A stretch of DNA of 64,000 bases, taken from the NCBI RefSeq assembly GCF_026571515.1, contig NW_026857502.1, positions 1-64,000 on the forward strand, read 5' to 3'. Shown here one piece after another: positions 42,354-53,410 of the stretch (position 1 is its first letter; each line of letters begins with the position of its first letter). The notes beneath the pieces were generated by a model. It saw nothing but the letters and a program-made list of their open reading frames with translations. It did no database searches and had not been told where the DNA came from. Made by a program: the position numbers and the translations under genes. This DNA comes from Ruditapes philippinarum (taxonomy: Eukaryota).

Positions 42354-45300
42354 ATGTCAGACAATACGAGTAAAAACCTTGGAAGGACATACTTTCTTAG
42401 GACTACAAGCATGTATATGGACCTAACAAAAGACACTCTTCTTCAGTTGTTTCAACATTTGAACAATAATGAAAATATCATAACGTTCTTGACTACAAAA
42501 AATACAAAAGTGAAGCTTCAAGATTTGTTTCAGAATGGTGTCCTGAATAAAAATGAATACACTCTTGTAAGTTCCTGTTGGCCGAATCCTGAAAAATTTG
42601 ATATCGCATTGTTGATTAGGCTAATCCTAGGATTATTCAGGGGTAGAATATCAGGACCACAACTAGGATGGTATACCAAACCACAACATCACGATGTATC
42701 TCTTGGGGCAGACCTGCTTCGTTTAAGAAATACTAAGAATGAATTAATTGGTCATCGCGAAAGTGAGAATCTCGATGAAGCTGAATACATTCACATTTTC
42801 AATAAAACGGAAGCAATATTAATAAGGATTCTTGCAGCTTTTGATCGAGAAGAGGCGGGAAATTTGAAGAAGAAATTAAACGAGTATAAAGACTTACATT
42901 TTGGATATGTGAATGGGAAAATAAGGAGATATCTAAGTGAGCTGGCAGAGGCAGACAACGAAACAAAGAGACTGCAAACTCAAGTAATTATCATTTCAAT
43001 ATTTTCTATTAAAATGAACATTGCTTAGCTGGCTGCCATATAATATTTTCACAGTTTTTTGTTTTTGTTTTTATATATATATAATATTAGCAATAATCTA
43101 AGTTGAGAGCAATCTTTTTTTTAATAAAAGTCAAACAAAAGTAAGTGATATATTGTTGAATTTTTAATACTGATAGTTTTGTTTTATTAAACCTTTGTGT
43201 TAGTATTTTTTAAATTTCTGTTTTAAGAATTAATTATTAACATTTCGTGTGCAGTTAAGATATTAAACATTAATTTGGAAAGTTTTAAGGGTTAGTTATA
43301 GGTGGTTTAATATTGACAATAATAAGTGTATTCTGATACATCTTAAAGGTTGAAGAATTAATGAAGAAATCAAAAGGTAAGAAGATTAAAATATAACTAC
43401 GGCACAAATTATAAACATTTTGATTTCATTTCTATGTTATTAACATTAAAAAATAGACAAAATATAACCTTTCTTTTTTAAAACATGCTAAAAAGTCGTG
43501 TTTGCAATAAATGCGATTAGATTATTTATATGTACTTGAAAGTTGACACTGAATTCTGCTTAAGCCGGTATAAGTGGGTTTGGACGGTAATTTGCACTTT
43601 AAAGTACGTCCATGACCAGGCATAATCAAACTGAGTCTGCAACATTGTTAGTTTTGTCGTTTGGGCGTTCTTCAGGGATTCCATTTTTCTCTATTGCTTG
43701 TATCAAGAAATTTCAAAAACCTGTGTATCATATTAGAAAAGTTACTTTAAACTACTCATATACATAAATCTTAAGAAGTGTTGTTAAACCTTTTCAAAGA
43801 CTATACAAGATATTTACAATTAAAATTGTAATGATGATTGTTTCTGTTAAAGAATTTCAGACGTTTTTTAAGACAACGCCGGAGCGATTTGTTCGATACG
43901 TCAAGCTGCTTTTTGATGGGGGTGGAACTGCTCTCCGTGGGATTCTAGAGAGAGAATTGAGAAAAGCAGACAAGAGTCTGGATTCTCTCCTTTCCGAAAA
44001 CAAAGAGATGCTTTTACAAACAATGCAGGAAGAATATTATCAGTTCCTTTTCCCACAAGAATCAAGCCAAAAAGATCACAATTGCTGGGAGGTTGGCCTT
44101 CTTGCATCTGTCATTCTTCTGATATTTACAGATTTAAGCATGGATGAGATAAATAACATTGAAGAAATACAAACTGCCAGGCAAAACTATGCAATGCACG
44201 CTATTAGCTGTTTAGATGCTGACGAATTCCTTATCATTTGGACAGACTTGATTAGCAGCCTCAAATATCTTTCAATGGGAATTGAAGAAGAAAAGAAACA
44301 TCACATTGAGAATCTTATTGACCGCTACAAGAAAAAGTGTAATGAAGGTGATGCAGATGATTATTTAGACCAACTCAGACAAACTGGAGCTCCAGTAAAG
44401 ACATTGAAATGCATTTACGATGGTAATATCTTATATTTGGTATATTATAATATCAGATATCATATATATGAACAAAAGTTAACTTTGGTATTTTACTTTA
44501 GAAGAATGTTATAAGAAACGCTATGTAACAAAGTGTATAATCAAATTCATTTTGTGCTATTTATTCTAAAATGAAATAGATGTTCCATCTTTTAAACTAT
44601 ATTTTTAAAGCTTAATGAATGTACATGTACTTTTAAATTAGACTTTGCATAAATGTTTGGGTAAAATTTACTTTTTTCATCATTTGATTTCTGTGAATTT
44701 CTCCGTATGGTTTAAATGTAATATACCTTTTTCAGAATACATGTATCAACTGAAGCAGAGATTGAGACAACTGAAAGAAAGAGCGCTTCAATTCAAGTGT
44801 GATCATGGTCAGTTATCATCATAAGAAGTTTACAATATTATTATTGCGGAATTTTCGAAAAATAAAATACTGTTACTGTGATTTGCTGAGATTTGAAAGT
44901 AAAATTGCCTATATGTATGTTTATTATTAATCTATTTTTTCATCACATGAGAAATTGTAAAATTTGTTTTTTATAGCGTTTAGAAATTGTAAACTTGATT
45001 TCCGATTCAGTATGTAAGAACTGAAGAGTAAATTATGTTTTTCATTTGTTTACAAAACCTTTGCAGTTATTTTGTTTTTGTTCAGTTTTAGAGCTTAAGA
45101 TAATGGTATCGTGTGAAGATGAAACGAAGAAAAGAAACGCAGAGGACGAACTTGATCAAAAATTAAGAGCCTCTCTTCTCGAATCACATCACGGTTATGA
45201 TTTCTTGCAGATGGAAGCGGACCTTTTCATGTCAAGTATTACCTCTCATCCAAACATAAACCTTACTGGGGTCACCAGATGCTGCATCATGGTATCATTC

Positions 45301-51300: not shown

Positions 51301-53410
51301 TATTCACTTGACAAGATGTTACGAGGATTATCTGATAGTGACTTGACGTTTGATCATGTACTGCAATTAGAAAGAGCGGAATCCACTTTACGAGTAATAG
51401 AAGCACCTGGCAGAAAAGTTACTTCTGAAGAGCTAAACGATTTACAAACTGATATTGAACGTCCGTTTTACTCGCTGCAAGTAGATAAGTCATCTTCGAC
51501 AAGTGTGAAAAAGCAAATTTTGTCTCTGCCAAACAATCCTTTGAATCATCGTCCGCTTTCTGCTTCTGATAAACTCGGATTTAAAGAAAGACTCAAATGT
51601 TTTTACCAGGTAATTAAAATAAATTACTTAAATCTGACCATCTTCGATTCTTTGTTGCCATCACTGCTTTATGAACACATTTGAGGGATGCTTCCTAATG
51701 AAACGCTTATTTCATTTTTACGTGTTTTGTTATACTTATTTTAATGATACAGGGCGTAGACGGTAGTGAAAATTGAATAAGCCTTTCCACCAATAAACTA
51801 GCTTTGGCAAACTAAGCTAAAAGTAACAATTTTGTCGGGTTGCCCGACTTTCAGGATTTCCGTTTTGACCATCATTTATCCTCGGAATTCATTTAGTCAT
51901 TTGTAATACGATAGTGGTAATAATAATGATCATAGTCACTGTTATCTTTAAGAAAACGATCTGTGCAGTTATGAAGCCTTTAAGAAAATGAAAATCATTT
52001 CACAGTTCAATTTGTACATAATTGTAGATTACCTGGCTGAAGAAACAGGATAGTTAACCTTTTTAACACTGAAGGGCAAACATAGTATGTCTAACACATA
52101 AATAACATTTCTTGTTAATGAAAAGTTTGAATAACACCATAATACGATACCATGTATCACGATATTTAATAATTTCGTTACTTTACTTTTCTTCAGGAAT
52201 TCGTTACGTTCAAGCGTCACATTATGCCGAAACTTGTGTCGGAGGATGAGGATTATCAGAGAAAAAAACAAGGTATATTTTAAGAACTAACTGTTAAGCA
52301 GTTTAATTTATTATACAGTTAATTTGACATACACTTTCGTTCAAACAAGTACTTAACTTGTCGTATGCTCATTTCGAACTTTTCATTTCATTTCTTTGGA
52401 AAGTCAAAAGGGTTTAAACAAATGGTTTTCTTAACAAAATATTTACCTGCTGAAACCGAAAATGATTAACCCTTACCATCTACCAGATTAGTTTTCACAT
52501 CTGTACAGTCTTACCAACCTTTATATTATTGGTAGATCGAGTATTATTTTTTATATTGAAATCTCATGTATTTTTAATGTTACTTTTTTTAATTAAAAGT
52601 AGGGAAAATCAAGGTATAATCTAAGGTGAATGAATAATTATCAAATTACACTATTGAGCAATTACACATGTAGCAATAGAAAAGTTCACACAAATTGCAC
52701 GTGTTTGCTTTAATCATGAATGAACAACTTGACATATGTTTACTGCAATAAATTGTCTTGAAAGCTTAACGAATATATTCAATAACAAAAAGTATATTTT
52801 ATGTACTTTTTCAGAACTGAAAGATTTTCTGATTACAACTCACAGGAAAACGTTAAAAGAGAAAGGGTTCAATAAAAGGATTTCGATGATCTTTGGACGT
52901 GGCCGTTTAATGTCGCCTAAAACAGGTATCGTTACTTCCTATAGAGGTATTTTCTACGACGACTACCAAAGAAAACAGCATAAATATATACATATCATTG
53001 GTGAAGAAGGCAGAGCCTCAACAGTTTGCTTGGAACTTGTCTCCGCTTGGTGTGACGCTCAAAGTGAGGGAAACGTGCACATTCTCAAGAATTTTGAATT
53101 CGTTTTCATGATATCCCTTTCGGATGTGGGCTCAGGCGATTCTATCAACGAAATGATAAGATTGCATCTTCAAAGTGAGGAGTACATTGGAACTTTAGAT
53201 CAAGTACTACAACTCGAACCAGACAAATGCCTAATCATTCTCGATGGATTAGATAAGTGGAGACATAATACTTATAACAAGTATTCTGCATTGGAAATTC
53301 CAAAAGGAAATCTGTTTTCAGACTATGTGATTCTCGTTACAGCAAGTCGTCATTTGAAAAATCGCATTAAGAGGGAATTCGGTGATAAACAACTGCTGTA
53401 CATATGTTAG
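42354..53410 (+). CDS. Multi-exon protein of about 1000 aa: 2x DZIP3-type HEPN, coiled linker, TRADD-N-like region, basic linker, degenerate truncated NACHT
   Basis: Exons 42354-42983, 43349-43376, 43853-44422, 44736-44807, 45086-45469, 45641-45850, [one unresolved exon], 50009-50078, 50504-50589, 51316-51609, 52197-52272 and 52815-53410. All are GT-AG and phase-compatible except 45850->50009. HEPN motifs FDIALLIRL..PQLGW..DVSLGADLLRLRNTKNELIGH; NACHT motifs FEFVFMISL, CLIILDGLDKW, VILVTASR. Confidence 0.75.
46234..47796 (-). mobile_element. Helentron-associated/pearl-like element with about nine 147-bp tandem units
   Basis: Terminal hairpin TATACCCCCGAAACGAAGTTTGGGGGTATA, (GGTC)n, GCATAACTTGA recurring about every 147 bp from 46346 to 47507, GCGGGGTAT sub-TIR and CTAGTT end. 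Confidence 0.85.
48768..49862 (-). mobile_element. Mariner transposon relic with internal deletion
   Basis: Imperfect TIRs (GTTCAAA..AATGCAACT) flanked by TA. Transposase remnants FSSVTWWCKK..VKDTPRARRPKTATSPKMVKKVK, SARWIP.LL, IITGDETW and C-terminal GGEYFEGLR*, with many stops and frameshifts. Confidence 0.9.

What the first reader, a model, noticed from the sequence alone, without database searches (positions are those of the whole stretch)
42354..53410. Unusual architecture: HEPN-HEPN-TRADD-N-like-NACHT with no sensor repeats
Seen: 11 reconstructable exons give two successive DZIP3-type HEPN-like domains (42354-42983, 43853-44422), TRADD-N-like segments (45086-45469, 45641-45850) and a NACHT fragment that stops at 53410 with no helical/winged-helix domain, LRR or TPR. 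Known: HEPN RNases work as dimers, and two HEPNs in one chain form a composite site in Cas13. Inference: this may be a single-chain HEPN pseudo-dimer fused to an NLR-derived scaffold, an architecture I do not recognise as described.
Basis: partly seen in the sequence, partly recalled or inferred. Interest (0 to 1): 0.8.

Follow-up and report, generated by a model that had tools for sequence, protein, structure and literature searches.

The report
Clam double-HEPN gene with dead NACHT stub
This is a real, transcribed clam gene of a fast-expanding immune-type family: it joins a predicted RNA-cutting HEPN domain, a degenerate copy of that domain, a TRADD-like adaptor fold and a shortened, inactive remnant of a NACHT switch, so it is an unusual variant of a known kind, not a new system.

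Summary
At 42354-53410 (+) I get an 11-exon, in-frame model of 1072 codons.

- **Exon 1** is a Pfam-significant DZIP3-type HEPN domain.
- **Exon 2** has no Pfam hit of its own, but it is a diverged copy of the same domain. This rests on its paralogues, a profile-profile match and a structure model.
- **Exon 4** folds as an RRM-like domain that resembles TRADD-N only weakly.
- **The last exon** is a NACHT nucleotide-binding core. Its P-loop has lost the lysine and one residue, and it stops just after sensor 1. No helical domain or repeats follow.

Spliced contigs from three studies join exons 5-6, 7-8 and 8-9. The 6-7 joint was not seen.

A Mercenaria RefSeq protein has the same layout, the same dead P-loop and the same end, so the stub is old. 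At least 25 loci in this genome carry the double-HEPN head, and so do Mercenaria proteins with other tails.

HEPN-NACHT and HEPN/TRADD-N/STAND combinations in bivalves are already published. The Cas13-like pseudo-dimer idea stays untested, and the catalytic residues are degenerate here.

The scan has noted related HEPN-headed genes elsewhere in this genome.

The parts
42354..42983 (+). Exon 1: start codon and first HEPN domain (DZIP3 type). Its motif reads K-N-E-L-I-G-H where relatives have R-N-x-x-x-G-H.
   Evidence: Pfam PF18738 at E 8.7e-16. The donor GT is at 42984. The alignment of 21 relatives has N129 and H134 invariant and R128 in 90% or more, with Lys in the window.
43861..44422 (+). 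Exon 2: second, degenerate HEPN domain (motif A-R-Q-N-Y-A-M-H). The acceptor is placed by reading phase, with no RNA evidence.
44736..44810 (+). Exon 3: short helical linker (YMYQLKQRLRQLKERALQFKCDH).
   Evidence: It matches P0002 residues 406-430 at 60% identity. AG and GT sites are present and the phase fits.
45086..45469 (+). Exon 4: RRM-like alpha+beta domain, TRADD-N-like.
   Evidence: The model has pLDDT 84.9 with the order b-a-a-b-b-a-a-b. TRADD-N 1f2h_A is at rank 5, Z 6.3, rmsd 3.8, 105 residues aligned, tied with other RRM or ferredoxin folds. The nearest ESM Atlas clusters carry PF20694 at score 0.94. Pfam gives no hit.
45641..45850 (+). Exon 5: a half-unit (b-a-a-b) homologous to the second half of exon 4.
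   Evidence: hhalign gives 92% probability, E 6.2e-7. The alignment has an invariant C-S-S-x-x-G. The splice to exon 6 is seen in runs X2, X3 and X6.
47817..47992 (+). Exon 6: low-complexity Lys/Thr-rich linker exon that restores the frame between exons 5 and 7.
   Evidence: Contigs of 3 runs join 45848 to 47815, as the tool writes it. This is the same product as a canonical 45850|47817 joint plus one base difference. The acceptor and first codons are conserved in copies C and D, and copy C has the same phase. The donor at 47993 is inferred.
50009..50078 (+). Exon 7: linker.
   Evidence: A GT..AG joint from 50078 to 50504 is seen in X2, X3 and X6. The acceptor AG is at 50007-50008.
50504..50589 (+). 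Exon 8: basic linker.
   Evidence: Joints on both sides are seen in X2, X3 and X6.
51256..51609 (+). Exon 9: fast-evolving linker with no known domain.
   Evidence: The joint from 50589 to 51256 is seen in 3 runs. The loose end behind 51610 matches 52198-52227 at 27 of 30 letters. There is no Pfam hit. Omega is 0.7-1.2.
52197..52272 (+). Exon 10: conserved short exon just before the NACHT stub.
   Evidence: It matches P0001 residues 1120-1145 at 54% identity, directly before that protein's NACHT part. Sites and phase fit.
52815..53410 (+). Exon 11: NACHT nucleotide-binding core only. Walker A reads G-E-E-G-R-A-S-T (no Lys, one residue short). Walker B is L-D-G-L-D-K and sensor 1 is T-A-S-R. 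The stop is TAG at 53408-53410.
46331..47624 (.). Tandem array with periods of 146 and 279 bases inside intron 5. It is specific to this copy.
   Evidence: Tandem Repeats Finder. The stretch is absent from the paralogue alignments. Contig depth there is very high.

Best explanation
**What is shown**
- The locus is one transcribed 11-exon gene of about 1072 codons.
- It belongs to a clam-lineage expansion of DZIP3-HEPN-headed, immune-type proteins.
- The N-terminal 'constant head' is a HEPN_DZIP3 domain, then an internally duplicated and degenerate second HEPN, then a TRADD-N-like RRM-fold unit and a half-unit.
- After the head come a rapidly evolving low-complexity linker and the remnant of a NACHT nucleotide-binding core.
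- The remnant cannot bind NTP in the canonical way, because its P-loop has lost the lysine and is one residue short.
- The remnant also lacks everything after sensor 1.
- The dead P-loop and the position of the stop are shared with a Mercenaria mercenaria homologue, so the stub is ancestral and not a recent break.

**What is inferred**
- The two HEPN domains pack against each other within one chain.
- The second HEPN acts mainly as a structural or regulatory partner, not as a second catalytic half.
- The TRADD-N-like unit acts as an adaptor or switch surface.
- The NACHT stub serves at most as a non-enzymatic contact module, for example towards the many full-length NACHT proteins of the genome.
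- This particular copy carries Lys in place of the catalytic Arg of the first HEPN, so its own RNase activity is doubtful.
For: **Domains:** for the two HEPNs. for the TRADD-N-like unit. for the NACHT stub.

**One gene**
- All 11 exons are in phase, giving 3216 bases.
- GT..AG joints 7-8 and 8-9, and the 5-6 joint, are seen in 3 of 4 runs from different studies.
- Intron bins have zero depth.
- The exon 9 loose end maps to exon 10.
- Contig depths of upstream and downstream exons rise and fall together over the 4 runs (a weak argument).

**Age**
- P0001, which is XP_053381116.1 of Mercenaria, is collinear with exons 1-5 and 10-11.
- Its P-loop reads G-E-E-R-L-A-T-S, and it ends 14 residues after T-A-S-R, against 19 residues here.
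- Its longer isoform P0113 ends the same way.

**Family**
- 25 of 35 exon-1 matches in the genome have an exon-2 match within 10 kb downstream on the same strand (my count).
- In 25 of 112 database hits, the second HEPN sits at about residue 190-270.
- All 18 of the hits that I scanned have HEPN_DZIP3 in front of it, one of them just under the Pfam cut-off. Their tails include Roc-COR, nSTAND3, PARP14-type RRMs, STAT linker and DUF4559.

**Selection:** omega is 0.23-0.57 for exons 1, 2, 4 and 5 and 0.10-0.14 for the short exon 3, against three paralogues.
Against: - The exon 6 to exon 7 joint was not seen. The tool masks 47991-48025 and dropped one joint there.
- Joints 1-2, 2-3, 3-4, 4-5 and 10-11 rest on homology and phase alone.
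- The NACHT exon shows omega 0.83-1.21 against paralogues B and C, at dS of about 0.055. That is few changes and low power, and gives no sign of constraint within the genome.
- Two of the four copies (B and D) carry stops.
- The catalytic Arg of the first HEPN is Lys in this copy.
- TRADD-N membership has no significant sequence support.
- No function of any family member has been tested at the bench.
Confidence: 0.6

Rival explanations
1. Decaying gene. The locus is a transcribed but functionally eroding member of a birth-and-death family, and the NACHT stub is a functionless tail left by an old truncation.
For: - Omega is about 1 for the NACHT exon, and 0.7-1.2 for exon 9, among the paralogues.
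- Copies B and D have stops, and a fifth fragment lies on C5741.
- This copy has the Arg-to-Lys change in the first HEPN.
- The P-loop is dead.
Against: - All 11 exons stay open and in phase in copy A, and every exon that was matched in copy C (10 of the 11; exon 6 by DNA only) is open too.
- The gene is spliced and expressed in several studies.
- The stub, with the same dead P-loop and the same end, is still an open frame in Mercenaria at 37% identity. Long neutral drift would not leave that.
- The head exons show omega 0.2-0.6.
Confidence: 0.25
2. Two transcription units. A HEPN-HEPN-TRADD-N-like gene ends in exon 6, with a stop at 48035 if that exon is not spliced. A separate transcript then covers exons 7-11.
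For: - The 6-7 joint is not shown.
- The contigs that carry exon 6 run on for 6 to 52 letters that the tool could not place.
- One low-depth contig of X6 runs unspliced from 47967 to 48408.
Against: - Exon 6 ends in phase 0 at a GT, exactly as exon 7 needs.
- The equivalent exon of copy C keeps the same phase.
- Exon 7 begins at an AG acceptor.
- Contig depths up- and downstream track each other in 4 runs.
- The Mercenaria models join both halves in two isoforms.
Confidence: 0.1
3. The protein is a catalytically competent single-chain HEPN pseudo-dimer whose two R/K-x-H motifs form one composite RNase site, as in Cas13, and which is scaffolded by the NLR remnant.
For: - There are two homologous HEPN domains in one chain.
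- In the four close copies, the second domain keeps both R and H: A-R-Q-N-Y-A-M-H.
- HEPN RNases act as dimers (established knowledge; Anantharaman 2013, PMC3710099).
Against: - This copy has Lys at the first site, and copy B has Ser there.
- Of the 10 tandem-type second domains aligned (the A4 set), Arg is kept in 6 and a His within one column in 3, by my reading.
- The Mercenaria homologue has no His there.
- The geometry could not be examined.
Confidence: 0.15

Closest known systems
Bivalve DZIP3/hRUL138-like HEPN - NACHT proteins (Takeuchi et al. 2022, pearl oyster, PMC9646362; DZIP3 family row in Anantharaman et al. 2013, PMC3710099). I read passages of both.
   Same: It has an N-terminal HEPN_DZIP3 domain with NACHT in the same chain. 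It belongs to a lineage-specific expansion in tandem or segmental arrays. This genome also has many NACHT reading frames of 800-930 codons.
   Different: The head here is a tandem of two HEPNs, the second degenerate. The NACHT is reduced to the core sheet, has a dead P-loop, and has no LRR, TPR or WD40. A TRADD-N-like unit and a long linker lie in between.
TRADD-N lineage-specific expansions of marine invertebrates (Kaur, Iyer, Burroughs, Aravind 2021, PMC8195603). I read passages.
   Same: It shows the 'constant region plus variable tail' logic. In bivalves the partners include HEPN RNases and STAND NTPases. The RRM-like fold has kinked helices.
   Different: Those expansions usually pair a DED with TRADD-N, and no DED was found here. 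Sequence membership in TRADD-like_N is not significant for this family. Their source-data tables, which I could not open, may or may not list this architecture.
Mercenaria mercenaria LOC128549058 (XP_053381116.1 and XP_053381115.1, 'uncharacterized protein').
   Same: It is collinear: HEPN, HEPN, TRADD-N-like, linker, NACHT stub. It has the same shortened lysine-less P-loop and nearly the same C-terminal end.
   Different: Identity is 37-57% depending on the exon. Its linker is built of two or three copies of a unit of about 220 residues. Its first HEPN keeps the Arg.
Cas13 (two HEPN domains in one chain).
   Same: Two HEPN domains sit in one polypeptide.
   Different: It is unrelated in sequence and context. 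In Cas13 both Rx4-6H motifs are needed (established knowledge), whereas here one or both are degenerate. There is no guide RNA.
Inactive STAND modules (iSTAND and iSTAND2) of bacterial conflict systems (Kaur 2021, PMC8195603, passage).
   Same: It is a STAND-type NTPase module whose NTP-binding motifs have eroded but which is retained.
   Different: Those modules are bacterial, full-length, and part of MoxR-vWA ternary systems. This one is an animal NACHT cut after sensor 1.

Membership tests
HEPN_DZIP3 (PF18738), first domain | Pfam model above the gathering score | tested here: met
   58.4 bits against 27, E 8.7e-16.
HEPN_DZIP3 (PF18738), first domain | Rx4-6H catalytic motif | tested here: not met
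   The window has K-N-E-L-I-G-H. The Arg is present in 90% or more of 21 relatives, and N and H are invariant.
HEPN_DZIP3 (PF18738), second domain | Pfam model above the gathering score | tested here: not met
   No hit at E<=1 or at E<=0.01.
HEPN_DZIP3 (PF18738), second domain | Homology to bona fide members, and a HEPN fold | tested here: met
   - 12 of 21 relatives found with it hit PF18738.
- hhalign against the exon-1 profile gives 91%, E 9.7e-7.
- The best structure matches of the model are Csm6 (Z 7.6) and Swt1 HEPN (Z 6.8), with 5 further HEPN-bearing entries in the top 50. All Z values are below 8.
- The nearest ESM Atlas clusters carry PF18738 at score 0.95.
HEPN_DZIP3 (PF18738), second domain | Rx4-6H catalytic motif conserved | tested here: inconclusive
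   R-x5-H is present in the window and its three close copies. The His is not conserved in the wider tandem-type subfamily or in Mercenaria.
NACHT (PF05729) | Pfam model above the gathering score | tested here: not met
   20.9 bits against 26.7, E 3.5e-4. Copy C scores 17.4 bits. The Mercenaria homologue has no hit at E<=1.
NACHT (PF05729) | Homology to intact NACHT proteins | tested here: met
   tblastn of intact reading frames from the same genome gives E 5.6e-19 down to 1.1e-14, covering only their residues 10-214.
NACHT (PF05729) | Walker A GxxxxGK[ST] | tested here: not met
   G-E-E-G-R-A-S-T has no Lys. It is one residue shorter than G-E-A-G-S-G-K-S-T of an intact paralogue.
NACHT (PF05729) | Helical and winged-helix part after the NTPase core | tested here: not met
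   The stop comes 19 residues after T-A-S-R. Residues beyond 214 of four intact paralogues find nothing in the window at E<=1.
NLR (tripartite receptor) | C-terminal sensor repeats (LRR, TPR, WD40, ANK) | tested here: not met
   There is no Pfam repeat hit in any exon. The gene ends at 53410. Downstream lie a 33-base minisatellite and a gene on the other strand.
TRADD-N / TRADD-like_N (PF09034, PF20694) | Significant match to the sequence model | tested here: not met
   The window exon has no hit at E<=5. Of 17 paralogous exons, 1 hits PF20694 at E 0.0069. PF20694 searched over the whole genome hits 2 other loci and none of this family.
TRADD-N / TRADD-like_N (PF09034, PF20694) | RRM-like two-layer fold with a four-stranded sheet and two kinked helices (Kaur 2021) | tested here: met
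   The model has the order b-a-a-b-b-a-a-b at pLDDT 84.9. 1f2h_A has Z 6.3 with 105 residues aligned, at rank 5 of 48,161, but it is tied with unrelated RRM or ferredoxin folds. Foldseek found nothing at E<=0.001.
TRADD-N / TRADD-like_N (PF09034, PF20694) | Conserved 'tiny residue then Ser/Cys' motif in the beta2-beta3 turn (Kaur 2021) | tested here: inconclusive
   The turn (residues 64-66 of the model) ends in a Cys that is kept in 90% or more of 17 sequences, with Ser in one. The residue before it is mostly not tiny.
Cas13-like single-chain HEPN pair | Two catalytic motifs facing each other in one composite site | not testable with these tools
   Structure prediction returns no coordinates.

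The most novel reading that the evidence does not exclude
Venerid clams have evolved an animal single-chain HEPN heterodimer: one catalytic DZIP3-type HEPN permanently paired with a degenerate copy. It serves as a portable effector head that is plugged onto interchangeable regulators (Roc-COR, nSTAND3, PARP14-type RRMs, a STAT-like part). In this subfamily the regulator has been reduced to an NTP-blind NACHT core. That core has survived since before the split from Mercenaria because it docks the RNase head onto the oligomers of full-length NACHT receptors.
Probability: 0.2. Interest if true: 0.6.

Novelty: new variant of a known kind. Interest (0 to 1): 0.38.

Why it matters
- **A bounded case for inactive domains.** Bivalve genomes hold hundreds of HEPN- and NACHT-bearing genes whose functions are untested. 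This gene shows what happens to a STAND module once its NTPase is lost: the core sheet alone has stayed as an open frame in two clam genera.
- **A candidate for the bench.** The same double-HEPN head recurs at 25 or more loci with different tails. That makes the head a good candidate for a first biochemical test of an animal DZIP3-type HEPN RNase, and of whether an inactive HEPN partner regulates an active one.
- **Limits.** It does not open a new class of system.

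Tried and rejected
- **BLASTP of exon 1 against exon 2** gave nothing (E 4.0). Only the profile comparison showed the duplication.
- **Pfam** on exons 2, 4, 5, 6 and 9 gave no usable hit.
- **A PDB sequence-profile search with the exon 4 alignment** gave only a designed protein (E 5.7e-4) and VAV2 chains (E 0.02). I take these as chance.
- **Foldseek against PDB** gave nothing at E<=0.001 for either model.
- **The search for homologous proteins with the NACHT exon** found none at E<=1e-10 among proteins of 0.55-1.75 times its length. 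This says nothing about longer proteins.
- **PF20694 over the whole genome** did not hit this family.
- **A continuation of the gene past 53410:** an alternative GT lies at 53405 in phase 0. I rejected it because all four copies and the Mercenaria protein end at the same place, and nothing NACHT-like follows.
- **A direct exon 5 to exon 7 joint** is out of frame and was not seen.
- **Haplotig origin of contig C7036:** I rejected this because intron identity is only 69-77%.
- **Literature:**
  - 'TRADD-N, HEPN, NACHT' found 3 papers.
  - 'DZIP3, HEPN' found 10 papers, 8 listed.
  - 'HEPN, NACHT, clam' found 14 papers, 11 listed.
  - Five phrases for tandem or duplicated HEPN found 158 papers. 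The 20 listed were all on Cas13, other CRISPR systems or Las1.
  - None of the listed papers describes a tandem DZIP3-HEPN head or a NACHT stub in animals. The 138 unlisted papers were not seen.
  - Supplements of PMC8195603 and PMC9646362 were not opened and may bear on this.
- **Species:** I did not check it. Earlier notes of this scan call the genome Manila clam.

Full report
**What is there**

The window is AT-rich eukaryotic DNA (GC 0.28-0.40) with no N. Between 42354 and 53410 on the + strand, the open frames, splice sites and phases give an 11-exon model:

| Exon | Coordinates |
|---|---|
| E1 | 42354-42983 |
| E2 | 43861-44422 |
| E3 | 44736-44810 |
| E4 | 45086-45469 |
| E5 | 45641-45850 |
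| E6 | 47817-47992 |
| E7 | 50009-50078 |
| E8 | 50504-50589 |
| E9 | 51256-51609 |
| E10 | 52197-52272 |
| E11 | 52815-53410 |

- The stop is TAG at 53408-53410.
- The exon lengths sum to 3216 coding bases, or 1072 codons, and every joint keeps the frame.
Everything was done exon by exon.
E2 must start at 43861, not 43853, to be in frame with E1.

**Domains**

*First HEPN (E1).* E1 is a HEPN_DZIP3 domain (PF18738, E 8.7e-16).

*Second HEPN (E2).* E2 has no Pfam hit of its own, and BLASTP against E1 shows nothing. Four other lines place it in the family:
- A search of the window's own genome with E2 finds 122 matches at E<=0.001, of 150 candidates scored. Of 21 aligned members, 12 hit PF18738 directly.
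- A profile of E1 relatives against a profile of the tandem-type E2 relatives gives 91% probability, E 9.7e-7, over 174 columns. The helical tail after the core is included in the match. So the two domains are an internal duplication.
- The E2 model (pLDDT 89.9, pTM 0.88) has Csm6 (4rgp_B, Z 7.6, rmsd 3.5, 111 aligned) and the Swt1 HEPN domain (4pqz_A, Z 6.8) as the top two of 48,161 chains. The top 50 also contain another Csm6, an archaeal 'hepn domain containing protein', AbiF, Cas13 and the sacsin HEPN. All Z values are under 8, which for helical bundles is not decisive on its own. Foldseek found nothing significant.
- The nearest ESM Atlas clusters carry PF18738 (score 0.95).

*TRADD-N-like unit (E4 and E5).*
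- E4 folds confidently (pLDDT 84.9) as b-a-a-b-b-a-a-b.
- This is the RRM-like sandwich with two kinked helices that Kaur et al. 2021 give for TRADD-N (PMC8195603, passage).
- TRADD-N (1f2h_A) is at rank 5, with Z 6.3, rmsd 3.8 and the longest alignment in the top rows (105 residues). It is tied with unrelated RRM or ferredoxin folds.
- The nearest ESM Atlas clusters carry PF20694 TRADD-like_N (0.94).
- Against this, Pfam gives nothing for the window exon, and only 1 of 17 paralogous exons reaches E 0.0069.
- The Pfam model searched over the whole genome hits two other loci only.
- I therefore call E4 TRADD-N-like, not a shown member.
- E5 is a half-unit homologous to the second half of E4 (92%, E 6.2e-7).

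*Linker (E6-E10).* These exons have no domain hit and evolve fast.

*NACHT stub (E11).*
- E11 aligns to residues 10-214 of intact NACHT reading frames of the same genome (E 5.6e-19 down to 1.1e-14).
- Its Walker A is G-E-E-G-R-A-S-T, against G-E-A-G-S-G-K-S-T in the intact frames. The lysine is gone and the loop is one residue short.
- Walker B (L-D-G-L-D-K) and sensor 1 (T-A-S-R) are recognisable.
- The frame stops 19 residues later, about where the last core strand ends.
- Nothing in the window matches the later parts of those proteins at E<=1.
- Downstream lie a 33-base minisatellite and a GT92-like gene on the other strand.

**One gene or two**

*Which runs.* look-up of sequencing runs listed 14 runs guessed to be RNA, from 8 studies. 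They hold 0.35-0.44 of the sampled words of 42354-45850, where exons make up about 0.54.

*What was laid.* I laid four of these runs, from four studies, on 45700-51699.
- Three runs (X2, X3, X6) each have a contig joining E5 to E6. The tool writes the joint as 45848 to 47815, with ends GG..AA.
- The same product arises from the canonical 45850|47817 GT..AG joint plus one silent base difference at 45849. I cannot tell which description is right.
- The same three runs show GT..AG joints E7-E8 and E8-E9.
- In X3, a loose end behind 51610 matches the start of E10 at 27 of 30 letters.
- Intron bins such as 50100-50499 have zero depth in all four runs, so these runs behave as RNA.

*The missing joint.* The E6-E7 joint is not shown. 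The tool masks 47991-48025 as a repeat and says it dropped one joint there in X6. The contigs carry 6, 31 and 52 unplaced letters beyond 47990. That fits either splicing to E7 or running on into the T-rich stretch.

*For the splice.*
- E6 is 176 bases and turns phase 1 into the phase 0 that E7 needs, with a GT at 47993.
- In copies C and D the acceptor and first codons of E6 are conserved. Copy C's version (122 bases) makes the same phase change.
- Contig depths for E5 and for E7-E9 go together in the four runs: about 4.5 and 5.9, 71 and 77-104, 29 and 44, 49 and 60. The tool warns that such depths are weak evidence.

*Outside support.*
- The best database hit for E2 of 112 is P0001, 1350 residues. 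It is XP_053381116.1 of Mercenaria mercenaria.
- It aligns collinearly to E1, E2, E4, E5, E10 and E11, and only weakly to the stretch that holds E3 (37% identity, E 0.018); a second Mercenaria protein (P0002) matches E3 well.
- Its longer isoform has the same ends.

**Age and state of the stub**

- The Mercenaria protein has G-E-E-R-L-A-T-S at the P-loop, with the same one-residue shortening and no lysine. It ends 14 residues after T-A-S-R.
- Its Walker B (L-D-G-L-S-Q) is more eroded, and Pfam no longer sees NACHT in it.
- So the truncation and the dead P-loop predate the split of the two clam lineages. The frame has nevertheless stayed open at 37% identity.

Within this genome the whole locus, including its introns and the downstream GT92-like gene, exists four times:

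| Copy | Place |
|---|---|
| A | the window |
| B | C5989, about 73-92 kb |
| C | C7036, about 14.5-28.8 kb |
| D | C7036, about 52-66 kb |

- Copies B and D carry stops or frame breaks.
- A fifth fragment lies on C5741.
- Nei-Gojobori omega is 0.23-0.57 for E1, E2, E4 and E5, and 0.10-0.14 for the 24-codon E3. For E11 against B and C it is 0.83-1.21, at dS of only about 0.055.
- That last figure rests on few changes. The 3' part of the locus is 90-92% identical between copies in non-coding DNA too, which suggests recent homogenisation.
- The two time scales thus point in different directions. I weigh the long one more, but the relic reading stays open.

**Family context**

*In this genome.*
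- 25 of the 35 E1 matches have an E2 match within 10 kb downstream on the same strand (counted by me from the two tables).
- E4 and E5 have 20 and 19 matches, mostly at the same loci.

*In the representative library.*
- In 25 of the 112 E2 hits, the match starts at about residue 190-270.
- I scanned 18 of these 25. All have HEPN_DZIP3 in front, one of them at 26.7 bits, just under the cut-off.
- Their tails differ: Roc plus COR-A, nSTAND3, PARP14-type RRMs, STAT linker, DUF4559, or nothing recognisable.
- Of the 18 proteins whose names I looked up, 13 are Mercenaria 'uncharacterized' RefSeq proteins (one of them named myosin-3-like). The other 5 come from unnamed Logan assemblies.

This is the 'constant head, variable tail' pattern of lineage-specific immune-type expansions that Kaur et al. 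describe.

**Catalytic residues**

- In the 21-sequence E1 alignment, N129 and H134 are invariant and R128 is kept in 90% or more. The window copy has Lys there, and copy B has Ser.
- In E2, the four close copies read A-R-Q-N-Y-A-M-H.
- Among the ten tandem-type second domains (the A4 set), I count Arg in six and a nearby His in three. The Mercenaria homologue has no His.
- A symmetric two-site composite centre as in Cas13 is therefore unlikely for the family. An active-plus-degenerate pair is what the sequences suggest.
- Whether the two domains touch could not be tested.

**What is known**

- DZIP3-type HEPN fused to NACHT, CARD, Death, LRR and TPR, with expansions in oyster and Nematostella, is in Anantharaman et al. 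2013 (PMC3710099, table passage).
- More than 50 pearl-oyster NACHT proteins with an N-terminal DZIP3-HEPN are reported by Takeuchi et al. 2022 (PMC9646362, passages).
- HEPN, STAND NTPases and TRADD-N combine in Crassostrea expansions in Kaur et al. 2021 (PMC8195603, passages).
- My four literature searches listed no paper on a tandem DZIP3-HEPN head or a truncated NTP-blind NACHT in animals. Supplements were not seen.
- Earlier notes of this scan record several other HEPN-headed genes in this genome. On this window, they also record the dead P-loop and the asymmetric motifs, and I confirmed both.

**Verdict**

It is a new variant within a known, combinatorially shuffled bivalve gene family. 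The pseudo-dimer mechanism is plausible but untested, and it is weakened by the degenerate motifs.

Noticed in passing
window 46331-47624: Intron 5 holds a tandem array with periods of 146 and 279 bases (4.5-8.6 copies). It is absent from the three paralogous copies. In the RNA-like runs its summed contig depth is 10^4 to nearly 3x10^5 at its 5' end (10^3-10^4 over the rest), so it is an abundant and probably transcribed repeat family.
   Followed up: partly
window 55102-55557: A 33-base minisatellite of 13.8 copies at 92% match, open in several frames on both strands. It is kept at about 90% identity in the paralogous copies B and D.
   Followed up: partly
window 56614-57572 (- strand): Two adjoining open frames of a glycosyltransferase family 92-like gene (PF01697, E 2.1e-5). 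The gene was duplicated together with the HEPN-NACHT locus: 56455-57899 is 90-91% identical in copies B, C and D.
   Followed up: partly
window 58855-60233 (+ strand): An intronless open frame of 363 codons, followed by one of 111 codons, neither with a Pfam hit at E<=0.1. A first-reader note (s1-804080) calls it jellyfish-toxin-like. I did not examine it.
   Followed up: no
G000:C5741:17956-27487 (L094, L095): A fifth, degraded relic of the family. It has an exon 5-like piece and, about 9 kb downstream, a partial NACHT stub without the P-loop part. No exon 1, 2 or 4 lies on the first 30 kb of the contig.
   Followed up: partly
Database proteins P0002 and P0022 (both with a STAT linker; P0002 is from Mercenaria, P0022 was not looked up), P0010 (unnamed Logan assembly), P0011, P0014: The same double-HEPN head is fused to a STAT linker domain (PF21354, E 3e-8 to 4e-8), to Roc plus COR-A, to nSTAND3, and to PARP14-type RRMs. 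The STAT-linker fusion is the oddest, and I did not pursue it.
   Followed up: no
window 45088-45849 (exons 4 and 5): The TRADD-N-like region is built of a repeated b-a-a-b unit with a conserved Cys-Ser-Ser/Thr-x-x-Gly at the strand-helix turn. Exon 4 holds two units and exon 5 a third. An odd number of half-units might pair between molecules.
   Followed up: partly
Database protein P0001, residues about 650-1145: The Mercenaria homologue's linker is two copies (three in isoform X1) of a unit of about 220 residues. Each copy ends in the exon 10-like motif, so the linker grows by exon-block duplication.
   Followed up: no
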